Positions 25,894 through 64,000 of a stretch of 64,000 nt of DNA are shown here, one piece after another. Made by a program: the position numbers and the translations under genes. The stretch is from Octopus sinensis (lineage: Eukaryota): positions 169,446,001-169,510,000 of the forward strand of contig NC_042999.1 in the NCBI RefSeq assembly GCF_006345805.1, written 5' to 3'. The notes beneath the pieces were generated by a model that was given only the letters and a program-made list of their open reading frames with translations, was not told where the DNA came from and ran no database searches. The stretch's first letter is position 1, and every line of letters starts with the position of its first letter.

Positions 25894-25990
25894 TCTGAAA
25901 ACCCTACTGAAGGAATGTCTTTCATTGAAAAACAGAAATACTTTGAAAGAGAAATACAACATCAAGCTTCAGGCGTTCCACGGCAACCAA
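25894..25990 (+). CDS. scrib: scribble homolog internal exon (SENPTEGMSFIEKQKYFEREIQHQASGVPRQP), phase 0 to 1
   Basis: Long polypyrimidine tract ending tttag at 25893 and donor gtatat at 25991. The peptide resembles the Scribble C-terminal motif (human PEQLSFRERQKYFELE, recalled). The end phase joins the 35143 exon. Confidence 0.88.
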
Positions 25991-31659: not shown

Positions 31660-32200
31660 AATCATCATCATCATCATCATTTAGCGTCCGCTTTCCATGC
31701 TAGCATGGGTTGGACGGGTCAACTGGGGTCTGTGAAGCTGGAAGGCTTCGTCAGGCCCAGTCAGATCTGGCAGTGTTTCTATGGCTGGATGCCCATCCTA
31801 ACGCCAACCACTCCGCGAGTGTAGTGGGTGTTTTTTACGTGCCACCTGCACAGGTGCTAGACAGAGCTGGCAAACAGCCACGAACGGACGGTGCTTTTAC
31901 GTGTCACCGGCACGGGGGCCAGCCGAGGCTGGCAACGAACACGAACGGATGGTGCTTTTACGTGTCACCGCACGGGGCCAGGCGAGGCTGTCAACGAACA
32001 CGAACGGATGGTGCTTTTACGTGCCACCGACACGGGGCCAGACAGAGCTGGCAGCGGACACGAATGGATGGGTCACTTAACCCCTGCTTTCTGATATATG
32101 ATTTGATTTTGATTGTTCTCACTGGTCTTGCCGGGTCTTCTGACGCACAGCATACTTCCATAGGTCTCGGCATAAAATAGTTCTTTTGGCAGTCGTTTCC
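31660..32200 (-). mobile_element. RTE-tailed SINE-like copy with ~5 tandem units, plus RTE LINE 3' fragment
   Basis: (cat)n tail at 31665-31680 and repeated acggatggtgcttttacgtg units. Confidence 0.8.
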
Positions 32201-35142: not shown

Positions 35143-35199
35143 CAAAGCAGTTCAGTTACCTATCAGAACATGAAGTAGCTCGTATGAAACAATATGAAG
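35143..35199 (+). CDS. scrib: scribble homolog exon (T)KQFSYLSEHEVARMKQYE, phase 1 to 1
   Basis: tttttttcag acceptor, gtaatc donor, 57 nt. Resembles Drosophila Scrib FSFLSKDEVEKLRQEEE (recalled). Confidence 0.88.
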
Positions 35200-36719: not shown

Positions 36720-37200
36720 TAATCATCATCATCATCATCATCATCGTTTAGTGTCCGCTTTCCATGCTGGCATGGGTTGGACAGTGCAACTGGGGTCTGG
36801 GAAGCCAGAAGGCTGCACCAGGCCCAGTCTGATCTGGCAATGTTTCTACGGCTGGATACCCTTCCTAATGCCAACCACTCCATGAGTGTAGTGGGTGCTT
36901 TTTACGTGCCACCAGCACAGGTGCCAGGCGAGGCTGGCAAACGGCCACGGTCGGATGGTACTTTATACGTGCCACCGGCACGGAGAGCAAGGTGAGGCTG
37001 GCAAACGGCCACAATCGGATGGTGCTTTTTACGTGCCACCGGCACGGAGAGCAAGGCGAGGCTGGCAAACGGCCACGATCGGGTGGTGCTTTATATGTGC
37101 CACCGGCATGGAAGCCAGTCGGGGCGGCGCTGGCAACGGCCACGTTCGGATGGTTCTCTTATGTGCCACCGGCACTGGTATCACAGCTACAATTTCCATT
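36720..37200 (-). mobile_element. RTE-tailed SINE-like copy, inverted relative to the 35810 copy
   Basis: (cat)n tail, body and ~5 tandem units. Confidence 0.85.
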
Positions 37201-37279
37201 GATGTTGATCGATTTTTATTTTTTATTTTTTTTATTTTTTTTTTATTTTCACTTGCCTCAACAGGTCTTCACAAGTAGA

Positions 37280-37510
37280 GTTTTGTGTCCCAAGAAGGAA
37301 AGGTATGCATAAGTGGACTGAGGCCATGGGTTATGAACTCACTTGTTCTGCTGAGTCTTCTCATGCACAGCATACTTCCAAAGGTCTCGGTCTCTAGTCA
37401 TTTCCTCGGTGAGACCTAAAGTTCGAAGGTCGTGCATCACCACCTCATTCCAGGTTTTCCTGGGTCTGCCTCTTCCACAGGTTCCCTCAACTGCCAGGGT
37501 GTAGCACTTT
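37280..37510 (-). mobile_element. RTE LINE C-terminal fragment
   Basis: Minus strand reads GRGRPRKTWNEVVMHDLRTLGLTEEMTRDRDLWKYAVHEKT. Confidence 0.75.
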
Positions 37511-38203: not shown

Positions 38204-38291
38204 AACAAAAAGCTTCCAATATGTCACATGAGGAACTTCTGGAATATATGTCACCTTACCAAGAGACAGAATATAACCAAGTTCTTGCTAG
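38204..38291 (+). CDS. scrib: scribble homolog exon (E)QKASNMSHEELLEYMSPYQETEYNQVLA, phase 1 to 2
   Basis: ttggtag acceptor and strong AG|gtaaga donor. It is the only good candidate I found that bridges the phase-1 end of the 35143 exon to the phase-2 start of the 55818 exon, and it continues KQYE-EQK. Confidence 0.8.
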
Positions 38292-38936: not shown

Positions 38937-39408
38937 GGTGTAATGTCAGAAAGAGCATCCAACTGTTAAGCATTGCCTCAATAAACAAACACTATACTGG
39001 AATAGTTCTACCGATACTGGAGACTATCCTTAGCATTAATTGATAAGTCATAATTCTCTATAGTTCTGTTGAGTGAATGATAATGTATATTCTTCAATGT
39101 AATACAAGTTGATACAATTCAATTCCTGCCTGAGCAATTACATTTGACTCATATCTTATTCTTGTGATTTTCAAACTCATTCAATAGTATGATGTCCCAA
39201 AAACTCCATAAGGGTTACACAAAATTTTTAGATGTTCCCTTCAAATGAGTGGTGTTTTTGTCACCTTTTATTATCCCCAATCATTTTCAAAGCTAAATTC
39301 TTGTCAGTTTACCTTTCGTTTTCTTACCCTTAAATTGCATGAACCAGAAATGAACACGTGGTTAATATGTTCTCTATTTTTTGCTTTTCCTTCTCTTTTC
39401 CACTACAG

Positions 39409-39420
39409 CCTTGATCTTAG
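39409..39420 (+). CDS. scrib: candidate 12-nt microexon (adds LDLS), phase 2 to 2
   Basis: ttttttgcttttccttctcttttccactacag|CCTTGATCTTAG|gtattt. In frame with both flanking exons. Confidence 0.6.
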
Positions 39421-40463
39421 GTATTTATTCAGCATGTTATATTTTAATGAATGCATTTACAAAATTTCTAAAATGATAAAAATATACCTAATTTTAAGTA
39501 TTCTGTTTTGTTTTTTTTTGTTTCAAATTTTATTTGCATTTTTGTCTTGTGTTTCTTATTTCATTTTACTGAATTCCTTCAATTTCATATGTTTATTGTC
39601 AGTGGCATGTCACTAGACTCAGTGTTGTTCATAATTAGTTGATTTGGAAATGATTTTACAATAGACATCATTAGCAATGTTTTTGTTGTTATTATTAGAA
39701 TTGTCTCTCCTGAAATTTCTGACTTTGTATCAATGTTAGAAACCAATATTAAAAGCATCTTACAAAATACTTCAGTATTTAGGGCACTACTGGCAAACAC
39801 AGGTCTTATCATTTAATTGTCATCAAACTTAACTGTGGAAGGATATTAAAAGCATAACCATGAATGCAAATATTTCTATCATGAATTAAATAACTATTAG
39901 TTATGGAGTTGGATACTATTTAGGAATTTAAAAAGGTTTTAAAATGTTGTGAAATGCATCACCAGCAGTTTGACCAAACAATTCACCACTGTCTGTATAC
40001 ATGTCAGTATTGAAAGAATGAAAGTGTTTAAAGAGCAGTTATATCTTTGCTAATGTTAATGAAAGTAAATTAATGGGACTCATATTTTCCTGTAGTACCA
40101 TATTTAGTAATGGTCCTTTACATTCCAAATTCAAATTCTATCCTGGTCAACTTTGCTTTTCAACCTTCTAAAGTCAGTAAAGCACAGTTAAGTCCTTGGG
40201 TTGATTTAATTATATATACTCTCTCCCAAAACCTGTGTGTAGCCTTATGCTAATGTTAGTAATCATTATTATTATTGTAACTAGGTTGTTGCCTGTTCTT
40301 ATGCTGCCAGTAAAAATATTTATTAATCATGCACATACTTTCATAAATTATTCAAAGTGAAAGTCCTTCTTTTAAACTCTGTGTTGTCTATAAGTTGAAA
40401 GACACAGAAACACACATGGACATAAACATACAAACAAACAACCAAATAAAATTACTATATATG

Positions 40464-41043: not shown

Positions 41044-41136
41044 TACATTCCCTGTGGCCATTTCAGGGGTTCATCACCGTATTTAATGCATGAGGGTGCA
41101 TCACGATAATTACTCCTTCATCAGGGGAAAAATAAA
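41044..41136 (-). ncRNA. type I hammerhead-ribozyme-like motif 1 (Penelope/retrozyme-type, non-canonical C16.1)
   Basis: Minus strand reads uuccc-CUGAUGA-[extended stem II agg...ccu]-GAAA-UGGCCA(palindrome)-CA-gggaa. Confidence 0.55.
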
Positions 41137-41167
41137 GAAACACACATCACGTATGAAATGGCCACAG

Positions 41168-42005
<838 letters not shown>

Positions 42006-43149
42006 TTTTTGATGTGTTTCACTGTGTTGACTGACTTGCACTTAAAGTTATCACGTTTTTAGTCAAAAGTTGTTAGGTATTAAGATGACGTACACACACA
42101 CTCTCTATCTCTCTCACTGCATTTCTCACTCAACAACTTTTTCTCCTCTCTTTCTTCTATTCAAAGTGAAAGTTTTTTTAAAGTCTTTGTTGTATTTGCC
42201 TATATGTTGAAAGACACAGAAATACACAAACACAAACAACAACAACAAAAAAACTATATCTATATATGTATATATATGAATGTGAGTTTGAAAGGATATA
42301 TTATCCAGGCAGATACTATGGTGGCTCTCAGTTATGCTCCCAGTTATGGCTAATCGCATCAATCAGTATTTAGCATCTATCACTACTATTAGTTGTCAGT
42401 CACTCTGTAAATGCCTCTGATGGGTAATTCTGTGTTTGCTTCACTGGATGGTAATATTACCTGGAGTATATAATAGCAATAATTATAACAATAGAGAACA
42501 TGGAGTCTTGTTCATCCTCAAAATTTATTTCCTCTTATTTTACAACTTTATTCAACATATTTTTATGATCTTTATGACCTACACATATTTCCACTGCACA
42601 AATTACAGGCAGTTGCAGAAGCAACCTGGCACAATATTTGGTGCAGCTTCTTCAGGGCCTATCCATTTTGCTAGTTTAAAAACTATATATATGTACACAT
42701 ATAGTCTTTTTTGAAGTGTGCTGTTGACAGACTTGCACTTAAAATTCCTGCTTTTTAAATCAAAACATGTAAATTACTATTGTGACAACACTACCTATCT
42801 ATCTATCTATCTTTCACACACCCTCTCTCACTCACACTATTTCTCTCTGAACAACAACAGTTTCTCTTCCTCTTCTAAAAATACATTGTGATGTATATTT
42901 TGACTCCTCCTCTTTTTTCCTCTCTATAATAGACATTGTGACTGACAGACAGATGAAGATCCACTTCTCTTTTATTATATAAAATTAGTTTAATGATTAT
43001 TGTGTAGAAGTTATAGAGCATGAAACTATTTTATTTATACTTCTAAGATTCTTGAGAAAAAAACAAGCTCAAGCCATTCTCAAATAAATTTATTGCCTTG
43101 TACTCTATACTGGAATTGTTATTGGATTCGCAAAATTGTTAGAGCATTA

Positions 43150-46879: not shown

Positions 46880-49855
46880 AGTGTTGGCAAATCTCAGAAA
46901 GCATGGAAGTTTTGAAGGATGCAGTGCTCCGACAACTAACAACTGATGCCGGCAGTTTGTTCCATGCTTCAGCAACTCTCAGCGGGAAAAATGCTTCCTA
47001 AAGTCATGGGAGCTGTGCTGTTTTCTGACTTTGTAAATATGCCCACAGGTGTTAGATGGGTGGAGTTTGAAAAGGTGCTCAGACTTATTGTTAGTAAGAT
47101 GGTTAATAATTTTATGGGTGTCTGCCAAGTCAGCTGCCAGACGTCGGATTTTCAATGTGTTCATGCCCAGGGAAGTAAGGCGTTCAGAATATGGCAAATG
47201 CCTGATGGAGGGTATTCTCTTGGTTGCACGTTGCTGAACGGCTTCCAGACGATTAATATCCTGGGCAAGATAGGGGTTCCAGACCGGTGATGCAAATTCC
47301 AGGTGAGGATGCACCATAGCTATATAAAGCCTCAGATAGATAGCCGGAGAGCAGCTCACAAAAGACTTGGTGAGTGATGCCAAGACATCCTCAGCCTTCT
47401 TAGCAATTTTAGCAATGTGTTTTGTCCAATGCAAATCGCTGTCGACAATACTGCCCAGGTCACGTTCACAAGAAGACTTTTTGAGATTAGTGCTGTGGAA
47501 GGAGTAGGTGGACGCTGGGTTTTTCCTCCCAAAATGCATGGTGGTACATTTGTCCACAGCTAACTTAAGTTGCTAGTCCATACCCACTGCTGCGGTGTGT
47601 CCAGGTCTGATTGCAATAAAGATCTATAGTGTACAGGATCTGTCCTCTTTATTTCGAGGTACAGCTTGATGTCATCTGCATATTTCAGCACTGTGGCATT
47701 CTTTAAGTTGGCATCTATGTCATTAACATATGCAACAAATAAAAGGAGGCCAAGAACAGATCCCTGTGGTACACCAGATGTCATCTCATAGGGTGAAGAG
47801 TGCTGTCCTAGAACTGTGACAACCTCTTTTCGGCCGATAATAAAAGACTTCAATCAGTTATAGAGATTGTTTCTTGCACCCATTGCAGAGAGTTTCACCA
47901 TAAGTCTTTTGTGTGGCACAGAATTAAAAGCCTTAGCAAAGTCCAGGCAAACAACATCCACCCAGGAGCTGCCATCAGTGATTTGGGTAACGTCCTCAAG
48001 AAACTCGATGAGTTGATTACAGCAGCTGGAGTTAGGAATAAATCCAAATTGTGATGGCTGGATGAGGCTGCGAGACTTCCAGAAGTTCCAGAGGGTTTCT
48101 CTGACACAGGATTCCATCAGTTTGGTGATGCAGCTAATAAGACTGACAGGTGATGTGCAGTCGCCTTTTTTGAACAGAGGGATAACACTGGCAGTTTTCC
48201 ACTACTCTGGAGTAACACCATTGTCAAAACAGAATTGAAAGAATAGTGAAAATTGGTTTAGAAGAAAGTACCCACCGTGTTTGAGAAGTAGGTATGTAAC
48301 ACCATTGAGACCAGGAGAGGCATAGTTACGTTTACTCTTAAGGTGGCGTTGTAGCATTGCTGGTACAAATTTCATAGTAGTTATAGAGTCTGGTCTCAGA
48401 GGTGATGGAGATGGAACATTTTGATCTTCGACAGTAAAGATGCCTGCTTTGCATCCAGCAACGATTTCTGCACATTCTTTGGGATCCCCTGTGTGGAGAT
48501 TGTGAAGGGGACCAACTGGGGAGTGAGGTCTCTGCTTTGAATGTACATACTTCCAGAACACTTTTGCTGTCAGGGTTGGTTGCTATGCACTGTTCGAATT
48601 CAAGCACTGCCTTTTTTGTCACCTGCCTGAGATGGTTGGCTGATCTATTGCACTTTTTCCTGTTGATCTCTGTTTGGTGCAATTTGTATTCCTGTTCAGC
48701 ATTATGGTGTTCTTTCGTGGCAAGTCAGACTGCTGCAGTCTCCCAAATTGCACTATTGCGTGGTTTTTTGTGCTTGCTTGGTACTGATGCTGCACATGCC
48801 GCCCATATTTAGAATGTTCTGAAGTATAGTGTTCACATCTCCAGAGGCATAAAATTCGAGCCAGTTTGGGCATCGCAGCTCAGTACAATAAGAGCTCCAG
48901 TTTGAAGATGGTTGTGGTTTTTGTTACAACCAATCAGAGACAAGTCGGTCATGATCATGGAATGATCAAAGTCACCAAAAGGTTCTTCAGTAGTGACACT
49001 AATAATTGTTTCAGGAGAAGTGGTAAATAGCAGATCCAAAGTGTTGTTACCCCTTGTGGGGGAGGTAACGACTTGAGACCAATTTGAATTCAGCCCCAGT
49101 TCAAGGAAAACATCTGCACTTTGCAGCCAACGGAAGTCAATCTCAGGGAAATTGAAGTTCTCTGCAATATAAGCATAAGTGGCTGTTTTCATGGATATCA
49201 AAAAGTTGTGTGTCTTGATGATAATTTGGGGGAAGGGGGGGGGGGCAAACAACTCCAAGTAGAAGTGTTGACATGGTCATGTGTATATTGCAGAAAAATA
49301 CTTCCTGTTGAGATTGGTTCAAATCATCACGAGGAATTGCCGATAGATTTGAATGAACGTAGACCATTACACCCCCACCACAACAATTAATGCAGTCTTT
49401 ACGGAAGAATTTATAGCCGGCTATGCTGAAAACCCCATCACAGAGTGCAGAATGTGCCCATGTTTCTGTGAATGTGATGAAATCTGGGTTGATACTTTTG
49501 ACATAAGAGTCAAAAAGATGTACCTTGTTGCATAAACTACGGGCATTTAAGGACAACAGTTTGTATCTGGATTTCAGATGACGATGATATACAGGGGATG
49601 GCTGATTGTTCTTGTTTAGTTTCCCATGATTTTTGTATTGCCAGTTATTGTGGGTGTAGTATGCTCAGTCCAACTGATATCCCTTATCCACGACTCACCA
49701 GACTTGACGAATTTCCATATTTGCCCATTGTCACGTAGGTTAAAGCTTTCCTGTGGCACAGAGTTGCGATTTAGGGAAGCTACAGATCTTAGCTTTGGGC
49801 ATACATCAGGTGGTAGAGCAGGACATGTCCGAAAGGTAATTCTGTTTTTGCACCA
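46880..49855 (-). mobile_element. CR1-clade LINE, near-complete but disrupted ORF2 (APE + RT)
   Basis: SLNARSL...TETW...GGGV; PTRGNNTLDL; DFAKAFNSVPH; GVPQGSVLG...YADDIK; LEFASPVWNP. Split by stops and frameshifts. Confidence 0.93.
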
Positions 49856-50203: not shown

Positions 50204-53200
50204 TATTTCATCAAATTTGCCAGAGGGGAAGAACAAAGACAAACAAACATAAAAAGGTGAAGTAGCTGCTAATCGATTAAAAAATAGTCTCGGATGATAG
50301 GTGAATCATAAAAAAATATATATAGTTTTAAAATAAAAAAAAATTTTATGTTCATTGTGATTTGCAATGTATTTCCTAAAGGCTTCCGGCCACCTAGGTA
50401 GAACCTTTAGTTTTCATCTTGAATGCACTTACTTGGTGCCAATCACACCTAACTTACTTTCCATAGGTTTCCATCATTTAACAAACATATCCCATGTCAG
50501 ACACCTCTTCTCCAGCCTGATCTTACTATTGAGGTGATAACCAAAGAAGTTGACCGACCCCTGACCAGTGACAAAGGTACCTGTCATTATACCTTTCACA
50601 CGCGTCTTCCATACTGTTTTTTTCAGTATGGCTACTACGCAGAAAAAACAGGCCTTCCTTTACCTGCTAAGGGAAGGGGGTGGCACAATCTTGATGATAG
50701 ACTCAGCTGGTAGCTGTCCTCTTCCCATCACTGACATCAGTTGTTTGACGAAAGCTATCGGTCCTTATAATTCCGGACACTCCCTATCCTGCCCACATCT
50801 CAGGCATGTCGACAAGACGGCACTTCCGTGCCTTGAAAGCTTGTCATGAACCGGTGACGCTGTACGGAAGCACTGCCAAGCCAGGGATTTCTGGTAATTA
50901 TCCAGTTACACCGGCTCATATGATCTCCTGAACAGGTTGATTAACTGATTTTCATCGTAGCCCAGGGTCTCCCCCAAGGCGTCTTTGGACTTGGTCTCTA
51001 CTAACCCGCTATAAAAATCCATGGTGGAACTCCTGCTGCCGGCATTACCCATCCGAGAGAGTAGCTGAAGTGCCTGACAGCACTCCAATTGCCAGTCCCC
51101 CAGCCTAGGTCTCTTCTTGATCCACGCACCAACGTCTGTTAAAGACATTAACTGTGGGAGATAGAACCGGAAGTGCAGTGACCACACCTGCTCTCCATCC
51201 AGGTAAAGCCAGAGGTGCCTCAACCTTAACACGAATTTTCGCATCTTCAGCCAAGGCATCCCTAACCCACCATTTAGCGGTTTCTGGCAGCAGACAGAGC
51301 GCTTCACGAGTGGCTTTCCTCCCTTCCACTAAAAGCAGAAAAGGATTCTCTCCAACTTGTTCAGCCACAAATCAGAGCAAGGTACTACAGTCAGACGGTA
51401 GGTGATAACCAATGCTATAAACGTCTGCACCACCTCCGCCCTCCCTAGCAAGGATAACGCCCGCCCACACCAAGTCTGGGTTAGAGCAGTCACCTTGCTG
51501 GTCACCTCACTCCAATTTTTCTCTATCTGGAGGTCTGGACCAATCCAAACTCCGAGCAGCTTAACAGGACCTTCTGTCCAATGCCCCACTACGTTATTGG
51601 ACAGTACTGCCACCGCCTTGTAACTTTTAATGGCCTTTTCCACCACTGGAAGCTGGCCTTCATCTGCCATGATGATGGAGATGTCATTCGCGTATGCTGT
51701 AGCTCCTCTTCCACACCATAGATCATGTGGCGTGCCCCCTAGTGCCTCCAACTTCCGCAGCAATGGCTCAAGAGCCAGTACATACAAAAGCAGAGACAGA
51801 GAACACCCCTCACGCACTGATTGTTCGGTCTTGAATGGCTTTGAAAAGAAACCATTCACTTTCACAACAGACTTAATATCGCTGTACAGCACAGAAATCC
51901 AACCACGGGGGGTCGGGCTTAAGCCAGCTTTCTCGAGGACCGCCGCCATGTACCGATGGTCAACCCTATCAAATGCTTTAGACTGATCTAAATGTACCAG
52001 TGCCCTCCCTGCACCACAAAGTTTCCTCACCCTCTCTAAGGAGTAGTGTATAAGATGGAGATTGTCATGGATCGACCTGCTTGGGATGGCACACGTTTAC
52101 GCTTACTCTAGCAGTCCACCTATGACCCACGCCAGTATTCTCACTAGCACCTTGGCCAAAATCTTTAACTCTGGGTTCAACAGAGTTATGGGCCTGAAGT
52201 TCCCCATCTCGCCCCCCTTGCTCATGTCCTTCCTGATCAATGTCACCACCCCTCGGCTCGCAGACTTGGGAATTCTCCTGTTCTGCTGCCAATTGGCACA
52301 GACGCTGGCCAGCAGGTGCCCAATCAAGTCTGGCATACTTTTATAAAATTCATAGGGTAGACCATCGAGACCCGGCGACTTCTCCCCGGGGCATTTGCCC
52401 AGCACCTTGATCACCTTGGCTGTGATTGGCCCTTCACAGCACTCAGCCTCTCGTGCTGACAGACATGGGCTGCCAGACAGGAAGTCCCTGAAGGCCTCAC
52501 CATGATCCAGCACCCCACCCATCCTGAACAACACAGCGAAGTGCTTGTAAAGTGCCTCACACATCTCATCCTGTCCCTCGACTGAACTCCACTGTCATCA
52601 ACAAGAGACCATATTGTGGCATCGTTGCCACGCTGGGTCTCTACCATATGGGCCCATCCGGCAACATTAATTCCTTCGTGGCTCAATGCACGCACTTTAG
52701 CCTGAAATCTTCACTCCTCATGCTTGGCTTTGAGGTGACGGTCCAGGGCCATTCTCACTGCTAGAATGTAGGATGCAGAGCCCAACCTCAATGCCTCCTC
52801 TAAGTCCTTAACTAGCTGCCCTTCTATTCTAGCCTTTACTAGTCCTAGCTAGTGGCTAAACCTAATAGACTCGAAACGAATGGCTCTCTTGAGGGCGAAC
52901 CACCACCACGCCAGTCAACGCCCTCTGTAGTAGCTCTTTAATCCGGCTACGGTATGGCTCGCAAGTCAAAATAGACTTGTTCAGCTTCCAGTAGCCGGAT
53001 CCTCTCTTAACTGTCCTATCTGTATTCAGCCTACACTTAACCATTTTATGGTCAATGTAGGACACCTGAACAAGCTGTGGACAACTAAAGCTATCCTTAT
53101 CTGTGGCTCTTCTGACTATCCTGTCTAAGTAAGACTTGAGCCTTCCATCGCCATTAAACCAGGTCCACTCTGGGACATTCGGATGGTGAAACCTGTACCG

Positions 53201-53469
53201 ATCTGCTAGCTGAAAGCGCTTAAGCAGATCCATGAGGCATGAGTTCTCTTTCCTACCGGTCAAGCCAACGCTATCAATGCGCGCATCAACAATAGTGTTA
53301 AAGTCTCCTAACACCACGAATGTTTTCGACATTGCGAGAAAGTTCTCCAGGTGCCGATAAAAATCAGTTAGAAATCCTCTAGCACAAGGTGCATGGAGTC
53401 CAATCAACCTGAAGACCTTACTGTTGTATGTCACATCAAGGATGACCAACCCACCTTCAGGGTTTACAT
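50204..53469 (-). mobile_element. 5'-truncated Tx1/L1-clade LINE ORF2 (APE, RT, C-terminus)
   Basis: VVLGDFN...SYLDRI...DHK...GYWKLN; SPGLDGLPYEFY...RPITLLN; LDQSKAFDRVDH...REGCSLS...YANDI. Confidence 0.92.
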
Positions 53470-53630
53470 CTACTTACCACACAGCCACCTCCATATATAT
53501 ATACATATAGATCTATATATATACATATATATGCATATAAATCTATATATATACATATACATCTACACATATATATATGTACACACACATATATATATAT
53601 TTATACACACATATATACATGCATACATAT

Positions 53631-53661
<31 letters not shown>

Positions 53662-53734
53662 CATACACACACATATATGTATATATATAAATATATGTAT
53701 ATATACATAAATATATATATATATATGTATCTTT

Positions 53735-53943
53735 CTCTTTCTCTTTTACTTGTTTCAGTCATTTGACTGTGGCCATGCTGGAGTACCGCCTTTAGTCAAG
53801 GAAATCAACCCCATGACTTATTCTTTGTAAGCCTTATTCTATCGGTCTCTTTTTGCCGAACCGCTACATTACAGGGACATAAACACACCAGCATCGGTTG
53901 TCAAGTAATATTTGTGGGGACAAACACAGACACACAAACTTAT

Positions 53944-53985
<42 letters not shown>

Positions 53986-54150
53986 GACAGGCTTCTTTCA
54001 GTTTCTACCAAATCCACTCACAAGGCTCTGGTTGGCCCAAGGCTATAGTAGAAGATACTTGCCCAAGGTGCCATGTAGTGGGACTGAACCCGGAACCATG
54101 TGGTTGGTAAGCAAGCTACTTACCACACAGTCGCTCCTTCACCTATATAC
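53735..54150 (-). mobile_element. SINE family A embedded in TA/CA microsatellite
   Basis: Full reverse copy flanked by (TA)-rich tracts at 53490-53730 and 54150-54350. Confidence 0.85.
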
Positions 54151-54752
54151 ATAAATATATACATATATATATACATACATATAAATCTGTATATATACAT
54201 ATACATCTATACATATGCATGTAAACATATACATCTATACATATACATGTATATATATGCATATATATACATACATATATATGTGCAGATATATATATAT
54301 ACACATGTATACATGCATGTGTGTGTGTGTGCATGTATATATGTGAGATATTAAACTGAAAGTATTGTCTCACATTCCAATAGATGTTATTGTTTCACTT
54401 TTGACACATAATACTGAAATAGTGTATGAGATAAGAGATTGCTTCAGGCTCGCATGAGGCAAGGTGAAACTTTTTGGCCCATTACACTGCATGGACCCTA
54501 AGTAAGGCATGTGTAAAATTTGAATGAAATCAGTTGGGTAGTTCTTGAGTTTTGGTGATGCACACATACAGATAGACACACATTCTCAGTGTTATGTTTA
54601 TAGATAAGGCCTAGAGCTCCTACTTTTGTCTTCCCTGATTCTTTAGACAACAAATGATGGCAGATTTACTGCTGTTGGTTTGGCTGCTGTTGCTGTGGCA
54701 TTAAATATAAGAGTGTGGTTGTTGTGTCTACTAATACAGGTTGTGTGATTGG

Positions 54753-55817: not shown

Positions 55818-55982
55818 TAAAACCACTCCACCAGCTGGCAGTGTTCGGACACTGAAAGCTGAAAAACGGCTGGTGCCACAGAAAATGTCTGATTCCAACA
55901 ATGTTGACACTTCTGGAGACAATTTAACTACAGATGAAAGAGCTCGTGAGGCAGAGAAACGAGCTGCATGGCGGAAAGCCAG
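55818..55982 (+). CDS. scrib: scribble homolog exon KTTPPAGSVRTLKAEKRL...DERAREAEKRAAWRKA(R), phase 2 to 2
   Basis: aaatag acceptor, AG|gtacaa donor, 165 nt open. Strong match to Scribble VRTAKAERR...RALEAEKRALWRAARMKSLE (recalled). Confidence 0.93.
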
Positions 55983-56703: not shown

Positions 56704-56840
56704 AATGAAATCATTAGAAGCTGACACCCTGAAGGCAAAGGCTGTGATTGAGAGAGCTAATGAATTATCTCAAAATATTTTGAGTCAAGACCCAAAATAC
56801 AAAGTCAATCCACTTTCCACCATAGATATTGCATATGCTG
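56704..56840 (+). CDS. scrib: scribble homolog exon MKSLEADTLKAKAVIERANELSQ...IDIAYA, phase 2 to 1
   Basis: ccccttgcag acceptor and G|gtatgt donor. Completes the WRKAR-MKSLEAD motif across the junction. Confidence 0.92.
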
Positions 56841-57076: not shown

Positions 57077-57550
57077 AGCATCATCATTGTTTAACGTCCG
57101 TTTTCCGCGCTAGCACGGGTTGGACGGTTCGACTGGGGTCTGGGAAGCCAGGGGCTGCACCAGGCTCCAGTCTGATCTGGCAGAGTTTCTACAGCTGGAT
57201 GCCCTTCCTAACGCCAACCACTCCGCGAGTGTAGTGGGTGCTTTTTACGTGCCACCTGCACAGGTGCCAGGGGGTTCCGGCATCGGCCACGATCGGTTGG
57301 AGCTTTTAACGTGCCACCGGCACGAAAGCCAGCCAAGACGGCGCTGGCAACGGCCACGTTCAGATGGTGCTTTTTATGTGCCACCGGCACAGAAGTCAGT
57401 CGGGGCGGCGCTGGCATCGGCCACGTTCGGATGGTGCTTTTTATGTGCTACCGGCACAGAAGTCAGTCGGGGCGGCGCTGGCATCGGCCACGTTCGGATG
57501 GTGCTTTTTATGTGCTACCGGCACAGAAGCCAGTCGAGGCGGCGCTGGCA
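57077..57550 (-). mobile_element. RTE-tailed SINE-like copy with an expanded ~60-nt tandem array
   Basis: Body plus about five gtgccaccggcac...ggccacgttcggatggtgctttttat units. Confidence 0.85.
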
Positions 57551-57920
57551 ATTATAGTGTTAAAAGAAACAGTTATGAATGTACTCTATTGTAGTATCTA
57601 CAGATGTAGGTTGATTAATAGGAAACCTTTTCCTGATGTTTTTGTGCTATTGCTTCAACGTTTGGACATACGTGTGATAAGCATCCCCTTATTTCTTCAT
57701 CAATGCAGTGGAGCCTCTCTCCCTTCTCATTCTTGGTGTTATTTAGTGTTGAAAATCCTAATTCACACAAATAAGAAGTTGGAAATTGTAAGCAAAACTA
57801 ATAAGGCTTTGTCAGCTACTGTGAGGTATTCCTTTTGAATTCAAATCCAAAATGTATTAATAAGTATCTCCAAGTGCTTTATTTTAAACTTGCAAAATGG
57901 TTTCCAGTTCCTCTTTTCAG

Positions 57921-61761: not shown

Positions 61762-61817
61762 ATGCTGATTCTTCAGAAGAGTCTAGCAGTACTCAGAATG
61801 GTGATGGTAAACACATG
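61762..61817 (+). CDS. scrib: probable scribble exon (D)ADSSEESSSTQNGDGKHM, phase 1 to 0
   Basis: ttctattatag acceptor and ATG|gtgagc donor. The phases link the 56704 exon to the 63352 exon. The sequence itself is low-complexity, so support is structural. Confidence 0.7.
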
Positions 61818-63351
61818 GTGAGCCAAAATTTATTTTTCATCTTCCTGCTGAGTGTGATGACATTGAGAAGTTCATCATATCTACTTTGTTCATAAACATG
61901 ATTAACAAATTAAGATTAATAAATTAACCACCACTTCCAGCTACTGTTGTATGTTTTCACACACTTCTAACTAAGTGCTTCTTAGTCAAAATTTTTAACA
62001 AACTACATCTCTTAACTTTTGTGGATTTCTAATTTTAGATCCTCTTCTAACTAATGCCACTATGTACTACACCTGCTTCAAATATTCTACATCACTAATA
62101 ATTCAAAGAACTTGTGTTCAGAAACAAGCAGGGATAGGCTTTTCATTCCTCAGCAGCACTACTGAAAGAAGAGATAGTTGGTATTACTAATATCTGACAA
62201 GCTTCCCATCCAACTAGAATTACTCTCCCTCAAAAGGATGAAGGTTTAAGCGAACTTTAAGTCTCTGCAGAAAGACTTAGAATTGAAAAAGACCTGCTTG
62301 TCACTTCATATCATTTAGAGGAAATTTTGCAACTTTGCCATTGATATTTTGGTCCTTTGCCTTGCCCAATTTGGAAGAGTGACCATACACACCTGCACAT
62401 ATATTCCCACACTTCTAAAACCAATTTCAATTTAAAATCTTGAAGCCTGTCATTGGCTTCCTTCACACACATCAGTGTTGTTTATTTGAAAAGTGGTGGT
62501 GAATTGTTGTTTAATTTGCTTTATTTTTATGTCATAAGGAAAGTTGTTTCCCTTATGATTATAACTAAAAAGAATTAAACTAATACTTTTTGCCTATTTT
62601 TGAATAAATGTGTGTATGATTTATAGTTCGGACAACAGAAAATAAATATCTTTTTGGTAAAGGACAAAATTCACAACTTACCTTTTACTCTTCAGAAAAT
62701 CTCTTAGGCTGGTTAATGTCTTCCACCTAACTAAGACTAACAGTAGCCATCAGCCCCTGTAAACCCCTGTGTATGATTAAAGGAGTAAGTTTGGTGATAA
62801 GTAACTTACAGCATTGTACTAGTTCCATCAATAACAATAAAAATTAGAAGTAATATTTATCACCACCCACACGTGGGCATTCTATTAGAACAGATGATAC
62901 TGCTATTTTCACCCCAGGAGAACACCGCCTCCAGCTGGTTATTGAATGCACTTTGCTCTCGATATATATTGCAACTGGGGATAGACCCTCCCCCCCCACT
63001 CCTACTATTCTAGCTCAAAGACCACCAGATCATCCTCCTAAGGTTGAAATCATGTGATCAGGTAGTCTCTGAGCTAGAATAGTAGGGGTTCTCTCCCCAC
63101 TTGTAATATATACTGAGTGTGAAGTGCAACCCACTTAAACCAATGTAAATATTCTGCAAAGCTTTCCGCTGTCCTATGTCCAGAAGTTTAGATAATACAA
63201 AGATCATCCTCCATACTACAAAAAGCTATAGTTTCATGGTGATCTTCCCTATTTTCTAATATGTTTTTGTTTTTGTTGTCAATAATATTTGTTTTCATGT
63301 CAAATCCTTAATTAACTTAAGTTGATAGTAAACTACTTTGTCCTTCTTCAG

Positions 63352-63561
63352 TCAACCACAGAATCTGAGACACTTATTCATCAAGTGCTACCCCGGGGTC
63401 AGTTATCTGTCCAAAAAGGGAAAGGAGACACTACTATACGCAGGTCAACCCACATGATTGATCAGAAAGTGTCAGAACTCACTGAAGAGGTTTTTGATGA
63501 AAATTTAGGGAAACCTGTCTTAAAAACATATAGAATTACTGAAAAAACATTAGAGCATGAG
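63352..63561 (+). CDS. scrib: probable scribble long-isoform C-terminal exon STTESETL...TEEVFDENLGKPVLKTYRITEKTLEHE, phase 0 to 0
   Basis: tccttcttcag acceptor, GAG|gtaggg donor, 210 nt open (ORF track 63322-63618). Resembles the tail of arthropod long Scribble isoforms (recalled, not verified). Confidence 0.72.
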
Positions 63562-64000
63562 GTAGGGTGCCACAGGGTTACACATGGTATAACAGTGCCA
63601 TGTGATGCCATGCAGTGACACGATTAGTTAACATTTTGGTTTTGGCTTTGGTTATTTTCATTATTTTGTTTTGGTTTTTGTTTCTTTGGAAAGAACTGTT
63701 GCTGTTTTCTGCTTTTACTCTCTGAAAACTGGTTGCTTCTATCTCATGACACTCTATTAATCATTTCATTATATTTAACTTCATTCAATAATAATTGGGG
63801 ATTCCTTTCTGAATCACATAAATTAGGACAAAGATGTATTTTGACACGAAGAAGCATAAATAAAAGAGAAATATTTAAACATACAGAACTATTAGCATAT
63901 TATATCCTTGAGCAAGGCACCTGATTTTATCTTGCTCCAATCTACTCAGAGTACCAACCAGGAGCTACAGCATCATATACATCTCTTCAGTGATCACTTA

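What the first reader, a model, noticed from the sequence alone, without database searches (positions are those of the whole stretch)
39330..39440. 12-nt candidate neural microexon in scribble (39409-39420)
Seen: a long pyrimidine tract with TGC (39382-39384), a TTAAT branch-like site (39362), then cactacag|CCTTGATCTTAG|gtattt. It is in frame with both neighbouring exons, giving QVLAS-LDLS-KTTPP. TGCATG lies at 39336 and GCATG at 39432. It sits in one of the few repeat-free islands of a 17.5-kb intron. Known: bilaterian neural microexons of 3-27 nt depend on Srrm3/4 (eMIC) and carry UGC motifs next to the acceptor, and (U)GCAUG is the Rbfox site. Inference: a tissue-regulated microexon that alignment-based annotation would easily miss.
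Basis: partly seen in the sequence, partly recalled or inferred. Interest (0 to 1): 0.75.

Follow-up and report, generated by a model that had tools for sequence, protein, structure and literature searches.

The report
Conserved 12-nt scribble microexon, octopod
The 12-base segment is very likely a real, optionally included mini-exon of the cell-polarity gene scribble: cuttlefish transcripts carry a matching 12-base insert at the same exon junction, but whether it is brain-specific is still untested.

Summary
The sequence is as described. CCTTGATCTTAG (39409-39420) has AG and GT flanks and keeps the reading frame between exons 38204-38291 and 55818-55982 of an octopod scribble gene. It gives QVLAS-LDLS-KTTPP.

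The decisive evidence comes from Sepia esculenta RNA-seq contigs from public runs. Some join ...QVLAS|KNVGQ directly. Others carry a 12-nt insert, CATTGATCCCAG (SIDPS), at exactly this junction. The insert has the same length and phase as the window candidate and is 9/12 identical. An AG/GT-flanked 12-mer that similar is expected about 0.03 times in this 17.5-kb intron, and the only one present is the candidate.

The same junction carries an annotated 18-nt alternative exon in the nemertean Tubulanus. Aplysia has an unannotated 15-nt candidate there (S-LDSK-S). Three metatranscriptome or RNA-seq products read SLNT/SLNTK/SLAG at this position.

The neural, Srrm/eMIC and Rbfox part is untested. 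The cis features fit (UGC at -27, 59-nt AG-free zone, best pyrimidine tract in the intron, GCATG on both sides) but are weak on their own, and the inclusion evidence comes from whole larvae. No transcript from the window's own species was reachable.

The parts
25894..25990 (+). scribble coding exon (SENPTEGMSFIEKQKYFEREIQHQASGVPRQP), donor CAA|gtatat
   Evidence: tblastn of Sepia and Argonauta products; sequence read
35143..35199 (+). scribble coding exon (TKQFSYLSEHEVARMKQYE)
38204..38291 (+). exon upstream of the microexon (EQKASNMSHEELLEYMSPYQETEYNQVLA + AG); strong donor TAG|gtaaga; ends in phase 2
   Evidence: 93% identical to Sepia P0002 residues 59-87. The phase-2 'AG|gt' end is also seen in Aplysia and Tubulanus.
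39336..39341 (+). TGCATG (Rbfox-type motif), 73 nt upstream of the acceptor
   Evidence: Presence shown; function inferred.
39362..39366 (+). TTAAT, a candidate distal branch site (fits YURAY) at -47, near the start of the 59-nt AG-free zone
   Evidence: inferred
39366..39408 (+). Polypyrimidine tract (34 of 40 nt are pyrimidines) with two TCTC and one TGC (39382-39384, position -27), ending in the acceptor CAG
   Evidence: One of only two such tracts in the 17.5-kb intron.
39409..39420 (+). 12-nt cassette microexon CCTTGATCTTAG. It adds four residues (Ser-Leu-Asp-Leu / LDLS) and is phase 2 on both sides.
   Evidence: 9/12 identical to the Sepia esculenta transcript insert CATTGATCCCAG at the same junction. 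It is the only AG/GT-flanked 12-mer within 3 mismatches in the intron, against 0.027 expected.
39421..39426 (+). Weak donor GTATTT (exon end TAG)
   Evidence: The constitutive exon 25894-25990 uses an even weaker CAA|GTATAT by the same score.
39432..39436 (+). GCATG, 12 nt downstream of the donor
   Evidence: Presence shown; function inferred.
55818..55982 (+). Downstream exon (KTTPPAGSVRTLKAEKR...ERAREAEKRAAWRKA), 165 nt, phase 2-2. It carries the first half of the WRAAR box. Its Sepia counterpart is itself a cassette exon.
   Evidence: Sepia P0005/P0154 join the microexon directly to RMKSL. WRAAR box as defined in PMC10626209.
56704..56840 (+). Next exon (RMKSLEADTLKAKAVIERANELSQ...), the second half of the WRAAR box

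Best explanation
Window 39409-39420 is a genuine, evolutionarily conserved 12-nt cassette microexon of an octopod scribble (LAP4) gene.

When it is included, the upstream exon (ending ...GCT AG) is spliced to C CTT GAT CTT AG and then to T AAA.... This inserts four residues into the disordered C-terminal linker (QVLAS-LDLS-KTTPP). The insert lies about 50 residues upstream of the WRAAR box, which binds SHROOM. When it is skipped, AG|T restores the same Ser codon.

Shown:
- the sequence anatomy and frame;
- gene identity;
- a 12-nt insert that is either present or absent at this exact junction in Sepia esculenta mRNAs, with related sequence.

Inferred:
- that the octopod copy is spliced in the same way;
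- that recognition of so short an exon with a weak donor depends on the strong upstream pyrimidine tract with UGC, read by the Srrm234 eMIC microexon machinery, and therefore occurs mainly in neurons, with GCAUG (Rbfox) sites possibly helping. I put this regulatory part at about 0.5 if the exon is real.
- that the insert tunes an interaction or the spacing of the linker next to the SHROOM-binding motif.
For: - Anatomy and frame.
- Gene identity. The Argonauta hians scribble homolog has LRR and 4 PDZ domains, and its C-terminal exons map to the window.
- Orthologous transcripts: P0002 (242 aa, contigs L001/L002) and P0004 (246 aa, L005/L006) differ only by IDPS, encoded by the 12-nt insert CATTGATCCCAG.
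- A third isoform, P0005 (L007/L008), and a sequence variant, P0154, also carry the insert.
- The six contigs match at 99-100% identity outside the alternative segments; apart from the 12-nt insert, L001 and L005 differ by one extra gap.
- L005, L006 and L008 trace to S. esculenta whole-larva RNA-seq. The species of L001, L002 and L007 is inferred from their near-identity to these.
- Similarity statistics: the only AG/GT-flanked 12-mer within 3 mismatches of the Sepia exon in the intron is the candidate, with 0.027 expected by Markov simulation.
- It is also the only frame-preserving candidate that starts S-[LI]-[DN], and it has the top pyrimidine tract.
- Deeper conservation of the junction:
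  - Tubulanus polymorphus RefSeq isoforms X1 and X2 differ by an 18-nt phase-2 exon there.
  - The best-pyrimidine candidate in the Aplysia intron is a 15-nt exon encoding S-LDSK-S with UGC at -11.
  - P0008, P0011 and P0052 read SLNT-R, SLAG-R and SLNTK-R. For P0008 and P0011 the codons are AGC...AGR, as expected for AG|C...AG|N junctions.
- Cis features match those reported for eMIC-dependent exons: long AG exclusion zone, UGC near the 3' splice site, UCUC-rich tract, weak 5' splice site (PMC8797185; window values).
- Drosophila scrib has an eMIC-dependent 30-nt exon.
Against: - No transcript from the window's species or any other octopod was available. The only octopod protein found (Argonauta) is the skip form, and it is an annotation model.
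- The donor is weak.
- No Sepia genomic DNA was available, so that the Sepia insert is a separate exon is inferred from the octopod, Tubulanus and Aplysia genomes.
- Neural specificity is untested: the traceable inclusion evidence is from whole larvae.
- TGC alone is expected by chance in about 40% of such windows.
- GCATG is not found near the Aplysia candidate or the Tubulanus exon, and Tubulanus lacks UGC within 120 nt upstream.
- The two middle codons differ between Sepia (ATT..CCC) and the octopod (CTT..CTT), so the peptide is only loosely constrained.
Confidence: 0.8

Rival explanations
1. The exon is real and alternatively spliced, but it is not neural-specific or eMIC-dependent. Inclusion would be broad, developmental, or controlled by other factors such as general pyrimidine-tract binders, Rbfox alone, or kinetic coupling.
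For: - The traceable inclusion contigs come from whole S. esculenta larvae, not dissected brain.
- Included and skipped forms each won the per-run assembly in different runs.
- The Tubulanus exon has no UGC within 120 nt upstream, and neither it nor the Aplysia candidate has GCATG nearby.
- The motif statistics in the window are weak.
Against: - The acceptor architecture (59-nt AG-free zone, UCUC-rich tract, UGC at -27 in the window and -11 in Aplysia) together with a weak donor is what PMC8797185 describes for eMIC targets.
- Drosophila scrib is an eMIC target gene.
- From my own knowledge, cephalopod hatchlings are rich in nervous tissue, so whole-larva inclusion is compatible with neural expression.
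Confidence: 0.35
2. The octopod segment is a decayed relic. The microexon is used in decapodiforms (Sepia) but is no longer spliced in the octopod lineage, and the intact AG/GT and frame are leftovers.
For: - No octopod transcript with the insert was found, and the Argonauta model skips it.
- The donor GTATTT is weak.
- 3 of 12 bases differ from Sepia.
Against: - The octopod and decapodiform lineages separated in the Permian-Triassic, roughly 250-300 Myr ago (my own knowledge). Unconstrained intron sequence would not keep 9/12 identity, both splice dinucleotides, the exact length, an open frame and the best pyrimidine tract of a 17.5-kb intron.
- Annotation pipelines routinely miss 12-nt exons.
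- The protein database evidently lacks octopod transcripts for this region, so the absence is uninformative.
Confidence: 0.08
3. It is a chance pseudo-exon: an AG...GT pair behind a pyrimidine-rich stretch that happens to be in frame and is unrelated to the Sepia insert.
For: - There are 421 frame-preserving AG..GT segments in this intron, 44 of them 12 nt long.
- The donor is weak, and the individual motifs are common.
Against: - It then proved to be the only AG/GT-flanked 12-mer in the intron within 3 mismatches of the Sepia exon, with 0.027 expected.
- Length, phase, first base C (AGC Ser), Leu/Ile-Asp and terminal AG are all shared.
- The same logic independently picks out one candidate in Aplysia.
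Confidence: 0.04

Closest known systems
Srrm3/Srrm4 (Srrm234 eMIC domain)-dependent neural microexons of bilaterians (PMC8797185)
   Same: Length 3-27 nt and frame-preserving. Lies in a disordered region next to an interaction motif. Long AG-free zone, UCUC-rich pyrimidine tract, UGC close to the 3' splice site, weak donor, strong upstream donor. Conserved across distant lineages.
   Different: Neural enrichment and eMIC dependence are not shown here. The motifs are not statistically compelling, and UGC/GCAUG are not shared by the Tubulanus exon.
Sepia esculenta scribble 12-nt exon CATTGATCCCAG (Logan contigs from SRR20545813, SRR25114244, SRR8281661, SRR20545816)
   Same: Same junction (..NQVLA-AG | exon | T-AAA..), same length and phase, 9/12 bases identical, S-[L/I]-D-x-S. 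This is the presumed orthologue and the direct evidence of expression.
   Different: Encodes IDP rather than LDL. Known only from mRNA, with no genomic flanks available. Also seen joined directly to the RMKSL exon, with the next exon skipped.
Tubulanus polymorphus scribble isoforms X1/X2 (XP_074656603.1 / XP_074656604.1): 18-nt exon CTTCAATGTTGGAAAACG at OZ123233.1:13817613-13817630
   Same: Alternative microexon in the same intron position. The upstream exon ends ..TCC AG|gt (phase 2). The microexon starts with C, giving AGC Ser, and the next exon starts with T.
   Different: 18 nt rather than 12, ends in CG rather than AG, encodes FNVGK, has no UGC upstream, and sits in small introns (about 0.3-0.5 kb). 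Homology as opposed to independent origin is not established.
Drosophila melanogaster scrib eMIC-dependent exon DmeEX0009376 (30 nt; table in PMC8797185)
   Same: Same gene family, a short frame-preserving exon, and experimentally eMIC-dependent in neurons.
   Different: Its position in the protein relative to this junction could not be mapped here. It is 30 nt, and there is no evidence of orthology.
Human SCRIB alternative exon 36 (short and long SCRIB; PMC4350421)
   Same: Alternative splicing within the C-terminal region of Scribble.
   Different: Not a microexon. It lies in a vertebrate-specific C-terminal context (SADH motifs, absent from invertebrates according to that paper) and has no positional correspondence shown.

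Membership tests
Cassette microexon (3-27 nt, frame-preserving) | Length 3-27 nt, multiple of 3, no stop codon, canonical AG/GT flanks | tested here: met
   12 nt, AG|CCTTGATCTTAG|GT, reads S-L-D-L-S in frame
Cassette microexon (3-27 nt, frame-preserving) | Observed both included and skipped in mRNA | tested here: inconclusive
   Met for the Sepia esculenta orthologue: P0004/P0005 carry the insert and P0002 lacks it, in contigs that match at 99-100% identity outside the alternative segments. No transcript of the window's own species or of another octopod was reachable.
Cassette microexon (3-27 nt, frame-preserving) | Conserved at the orthologous junction in other species | tested here: met
   Sepia: 12 nt, 9/12 identical, with chance expectation 0.027. 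Tubulanus: 18-nt annotated exon at the same phase-2 junction. Aplysia: 15-nt S-LDSK-S candidate. P0008, P0011 and P0052 show the same pattern.
eMIC (Srrm3/4, Srrm234)-dependent neural microexon | Higher inclusion in neural than in non-neural tissue | not testable with these tools
   The traceable inclusion contigs derive from whole larvae. The tissue of the skip-form runs (SRR7369732, SRR5319790) was not found in the literature library.
eMIC (Srrm3/4, Srrm234)-dependent neural microexon | Inclusion depends on the eMIC domain protein | not testable with these tools
   Needs knock-down or a minigene experiment.
eMIC (Srrm3/4, Srrm234)-dependent neural microexon | 3' splice-site architecture: UGC close to the acceptor, long UC-rich pyrimidine tract, long AG exclusion zone, distal branch point | tested here: met
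   UGC at -27, two TCTC, 34/40 pyrimidines, 59-nt AG-free zone, TTAAT at -47. Caveat: TGC alone is expected by chance in about 40% of such windows. Only the pyrimidine tract is rare (2 such stretches in 17.5 kb).
Rbfox-regulated exon | (U)GCAUG in the flanking introns | tested here: met
   TGCATG at -73 and GCATG at +12. 2.7% of intron positions have GCATG within 100 nt on both sides.
Rbfox-regulated exon | Motif conserved next to the orthologous exon in other species | tested here: not met
   No GCATG within 120 nt of the Aplysia candidate or the Tubulanus microexon. Cephalopod orthologous introns were not available.
Scribble / LAP4 gene | [quoted passage not shown] | tested here: met
   The window holds only C-terminal exons. 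They align to Argonauta hians 'protein scribble homolog' residues about 1590-1817, a protein with LRR_8/LRR_14 and 4 PDZ hits. WRAAR-type sequence EAEKRAAWRKARMKSLEAD is at 55940-55982 / 56704-.

The most novel reading that the evidence does not exclude
The 12-nt exon is the cephalopod version of an ancient alternative-splicing module in the Scribble C-terminal linker. The module would be spiralian-wide (molluscs plus nemerteans, more than 500 Myr old).

It would consist of a 12-18-nt microexon, S-[L/I/F]-[D/N]-.., followed by a second cassette exon that carries the first half of the WRAAR box, which binds SHROOM. Neurons could then switch Scribble between forms with altered or absent SHROOM/ROCK coupling.

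This module is largely unannotated in molluscs. The Argonauta and Aplysia models lack the microexon.
Probability: 0.3. Interest if true: 0.65.

Novelty: new member of a known kind. Interest (0 to 1): 0.5.

Why it matters
Microexons are the most conserved class of alternative splicing in vertebrate neurons. The programme outside vertebrates and flies is barely charted, and the papers I could search had nothing on cephalopod microexons.

This case shows that a 12-nt exon picked from raw sequence alone can be confirmed by cross-species transcript evidence. It also shows that current gene models miss it (Argonauta; probably Aplysia).

Biologically, the exon sits in the Scribble C-terminal linker, just upstream of the one C-terminal motif conserved in all metazoan Scribbles: the WRAAR box, which recruits SHROOM2/4-ROCK. 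Next to it is a second cassette exon whose skipping halves that box. If inclusion is neural, this gives a concrete, testable handle on how a polarity scaffold is retuned in the large cephalopod nervous system. It also provides a marker exon for asking whether the eMIC programme operates in molluscs.

Tried and rejected
1. An 88-aa spliced peptide across the junction found nothing. This was a false negative of the word index: P0002 shares 17 consecutive residues with the query and was only found with a different query. Negatives from that tool are therefore weak.
I used an alignment of P0002 and P0003 instead.
3. The Argonauta hians genomic locus was not obtainable because the gene spans 259 kb, so there was no octopod-octopod intron comparison.
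4. An exact look-up of the intronic ORF 39245-39613, meant to find contigs of the same species, returned nothing on record.
5. A profile search with 9 sequences returned no new cephalopod transcripts.
6. Two metagenome scans, one for the inclusion junction and one for a 20-nt block conserved between octopod and Sepia, each gave 0 hits. The collection holds no cephalopod scribble, so this is uninformative.
7. In the Lottia gigantea locus, the intron where the exon should lie is a 3.1-kb run of N. Inconclusive.
8. I considered SADH spectrin-binding motifs as functional context and rejected them. The paper states they are vertebrate-specific.
9. The tissue of SRR7369732, SRR5319790 and SRR8281661 was not found in the searchable literature.
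10. An alternative 27-nt version using the GT at 39436 is frame-preserving but has no cross-species support.
11. Splice-site scores come from a rough PWM written from general knowledge, not MaxEntScan. I used them only for ranking within this window.
Full report
**1. The observation**

The stretch ...ttctctattttttgcttttccttctcttttccactacag|CCTTGATCTTAG|gtatttattcagcatg places the 12-nt segment at 39409-39420. TGC is at 39382-84, TTAAT at 39362-66, TGCATG at 39336-41 and GCATG at 39432-36.

The upstream exon ends ...CAA GTT CTT GCT AG|gtaaga at 38291. The downstream exon begins tag|T AAA ACC ACT at 55818. The split codon is AG+C (Ser) with the segment and AG+T (Ser) without it. The products read ...NQVLAS-LDLS-KTTPP... 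and ...NQVLAS-KTTPP.... The intron is 17,526 nt.

One small addition: the downstream exon ends at 55982 (CAG|gtacaa) and continues into 56704-56840.

**2. How much is chance, from this sequence alone**

The intron holds 421 frame-preserving, stop-free AG..GT segments of 3-27 nt, 44 of them 12 nt long. Existence alone means nothing.

- The candidate is the only one that combines at least 90% pyrimidines at -23..-4 with a donor at least as good as its own.
- Its tract is one of two stretches with at least 85% pyrimidines over 40 nt in the intron.
- It has a 59-nt AG-free zone.
- The donor TAG|GTATTT is weak: 15% of all intronic GT score as well with my rough matrix. However, the constitutive exon 25894-25990 of the same gene uses the even weaker CAA|GTATAT.
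- TGC occurs 14 times per kb and is uninformative.
- GCATG within 100 nt on both sides occurs at 2.7% of positions.
- The segment lies in 38937-40116, which has no other copy in the window. Much of the rest of the intron is microsatellite and an antisense LINE.

Taken alone, this makes it a good but unproven candidate.

**3. Gene identity**

The window contains only C-terminal exons: 25894-25990, 35143-35199, 38204-38291, 55818-55982, 56704-56840, 61762-61817 and 63352-63561.

A profile search found a 1819-aa protein, P0006, whose last ~230 residues align to these exons. It is GAB1600140.1, 'protein scribble homolog [Argonauta hians]', and it has LRR and four PDZ hits. More distant hits are scribble/lap4 of Aplysia, Tubulanus and insects.

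The window is therefore from an octopod scribble gene. Genomic contigs L003/L004 from another octopod are 85% identical to 62387-63974. The Argonauta model reads ...NQVLAS|KTSPTVG..., which is the skip form.

**4. The decisive evidence**

A search with the spliced C-terminal peptide found P0002 (242 aa). It is encoded by spliced RNA-seq contigs L001 and L002 and reads ...NQVLAS|KNVGQASVVRTAKAEKR.... Its 90% cluster has one other member, P0004 (246 aa). P0004 is identical except for ...NQVLAS-IDPS-KNVGQ....

At the DNA level, contigs L005 and L006 carry CATTGATCCCAG between ...CTTGCAAG and TAAAAATG. L001 and L002 lack it.

A third form, P0005 (contigs L007 and L008), and a sequence variant, P0154, carry the same insert joined directly to the RMKSL exon. 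Outside the alternative segments the six contigs match at 99-100% identity.

L005, L006 and L008 come from Sepia esculenta whole-larva RNA-seq: SRR20545813 and SRR20545816 in PMC10466719, and SRR25114244 in PMC10442824. The species of L001, L002 and L007 is inferred from their near-identity to these.

So a decapodiform cephalopod expresses mRNAs with and without a 12-nt insert at exactly the junction where the window has its candidate.

**5. Correspondence of the two 12-mers**

| | sequence | peptide |
|---|---|---|
| Octopod (window) | C CTT GAT CTT AG | S-LDL-S |
| Sepia | C ATT GAT CCC AG | S-IDP-S |

Length and phase are the same and 9/12 bases are identical: first base C, Leu/Ile, Asp, terminal AG.

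In the window intron the candidate is the only AG/GT-flanked 12-mer within three mismatches of the Sepia exon. A first-order Markov simulation expects 0.027. It is also the only frame-preserving candidate beginning S-[LI]-[DN].

The 12 nt next to the window's flanking exons (gtaagaccatat; tcctgtaaatag) do not resemble the insert. In the octopod the counterpart is therefore a separate cassette exon, not an alternative donor or acceptor.

I consider coincidence essentially excluded.

**6. Deeper conservation (suggestive, not needed for the verdict)**

- *Tubulanus polymorphus.* RefSeq isoforms X1 and X2 differ by FNVGKR at ...KMMSS|...|ESKKLSP. In the genome the upstream exon ends TCC AG|gtaaag. 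An 18-nt exon, cag|CTTCAATGTTGGAAAACG|gtaaaa, follows 0.3 kb downstream, and the next exon starts tag|T GAA. This is the same phase-2 junction.
- *Aplysia californica.* The corresponding intron (exon end TCC AG|gtgagc) contains 70 frame-preserving candidates of 6-27 nt. The one with the best pyrimidine tract is also the only one starting S-[LI]-[DN]: cag|TCTGGATTCCAAAAG|gtaaca, encoding S-LDSK-S, with UGC at -11. It is not in the Aplysia protein models.
- *Transcript-derived products of unidentified spiralians.* They read VLS-S-LNT-R-SSGVVRT (P0008; its best named match is Aplysia), IMS-S-LAG-R-PKQ (P0011) and VLS-S-LNTK-R-MKNL (P0052). In P0008 and P0011 the Ser is AGC and the Arg is AGR, as AG|C....AG|N junctions require.
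- *Lottia.* Uninformative, because the intron is a gap.

**7. Mechanism**

Shown: the anatomy, the frame, and alternative use in Sepia.

Inferred: a 12-nt exon cannot be defined across itself and here has a weak donor. Recognition must rest on the unusually strong acceptor region. Its architecture is:
- a distal YURAY site at -47;
- a 59-nt AG-free zone;
- a UCUC-rich tract;
- UGC at -27;
- a strong upstream donor.

This is what PMC8797185 reports for eMIC-dependent exons in flies and mammals. That paper also lists a 30-nt eMIC-dependent exon in Drosophila scrib. This makes Srrm234/eMIC-driven, neuron-biased inclusion the most likely mode. It is not tested: the traceable inclusion evidence is from whole larvae, the tissues of the skip-form runs are unknown, and UGC and GCAUG are not shared by the Tubulanus exon. 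I put it at about 0.5 given that the exon is real.

At the protein level, the insert lies in the disordered linker. It is about 35 residues after the conserved KQFSYL..HEV..MKQ block and about 50 residues before EAEKRAAWRKARMKSLEAD. The latter is the WRAAR box, shown in human SCRIB to bind SHROOM2/4 (PMC10626209). A plausible effect is altered spacing or a new short motif next to that site. This is speculation.

**8. Novelty and score**

This is a new member of a known kind: a conserved cassette microexon in a gene already known to be an eMIC target in flies. I found no paper on cephalopod microexons. I could not check whether RefSeq isoforms of Octopus species already contain it.

Interest is 0.5. 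It would be higher if the spiralian-wide module (microexon plus the neighbouring WRAAR-half cassette exon) and neural regulation are confirmed.

Noticed in passing
window 55818-55982; Sepia contigs L007/L008 (P0005, P0154): The 165-nt exon after the microexon (phase 2-2) is itself a cassette exon in Sepia. P0005 reads ..QVLASIDP-RMKSL.., which deletes the VRTAKAEKR block and the first half of the WRAAR (SHROOM-binding) box. Gastropod-like P0016 (VLS-G-MKSLE) and P0052 (SLNTK-RMKNL) show the same skip.
   Followed up: partly
L001, L002, L005-L008 (Sepia esculenta RNA-seq contigs), 5' parts: All six contigs share a stop-rich 5' leader of about 375-780 nt before an ATG (MEPETQKENPTEG..). This gives a 185-246-aa C-terminal-only scribble product without LRR or PDZ domains. 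The cause is either an internal promoter or a retained intron. Lottia model LOTGIDRAFT_175955 and several short metatranscriptome ORFs start in the same region.
   Followed up: partly
window 63352-63561: This 210-nt phase 0-0 exon (STTESETLIHQ...EKTLEHE) is absent from the Sepia and Argonauta products, which run from ..HM straight to VEVTK(K/Q)QIY... Tubulanus and Lottia contain the equivalent segment, so it is probably another cassette exon. The VEVTK exon must lie beyond the window end.
   Followed up: partly
L014 87536-87550 (Aplysia californica KB942645.1:87764-87778): Unannotated 15-nt candidate microexon TCTGGATTCCAAAAG (S-LDSK-S) in the orthologous scribble intron. It has the best pyrimidine tract of 70 candidates, UGC at -11 and donor AAG|gtaaca.
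   Followed up: partly
L014 about 90015-90023 (Aplysia): NAGNAG acceptor (ttttag|tag|CCCCCG) at the exon after the microexon position. It explains the one-Ser difference between the two Aplysia protein versions (LLSSSPPRS versus LLSSPPRS).
   Followed up: no
window 51332-53473 (- strand): Antisense LINE-type retrotransposon inside the large intron: Exo_endo_phos endonuclease ORF at 52865-53473 and RVT_1 ORF at 51332-52096. Further RT-like ORFs at 46982-48582 had no Pfam hit at E<=0.001.
   Followed up: partly
window 31700-32180, 36720-37310, 57110-57840: A G+C-rich repeat family whose three reading frames are all open for 100-200 codons. It stands out against the 38% GC background. No Pfam hit for the copy tested.
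   Followed up: no
window 41110-42060, 53370-54400: Long (TA)n / (TATA..TG)n-type microsatellite arrays, which read as YIYIYI in translation. They fill much of the intron downstream of the microexon.
   Followed up: no
window 39409-39435: A second in-frame donor (GCAT|gt at 39436) would give a 27-nt version (S-LDLRYLFS-I) of the same exon. There is no cross-species support for it.
   Followed up: no
tool behaviour, versus 19 and 47: The word-indexed protein search missed P0002 and the Argonauta protein even though they share identical runs of 17-19 residues with the queries. Negative results from it should not be read as absence.
   Followed up: yes
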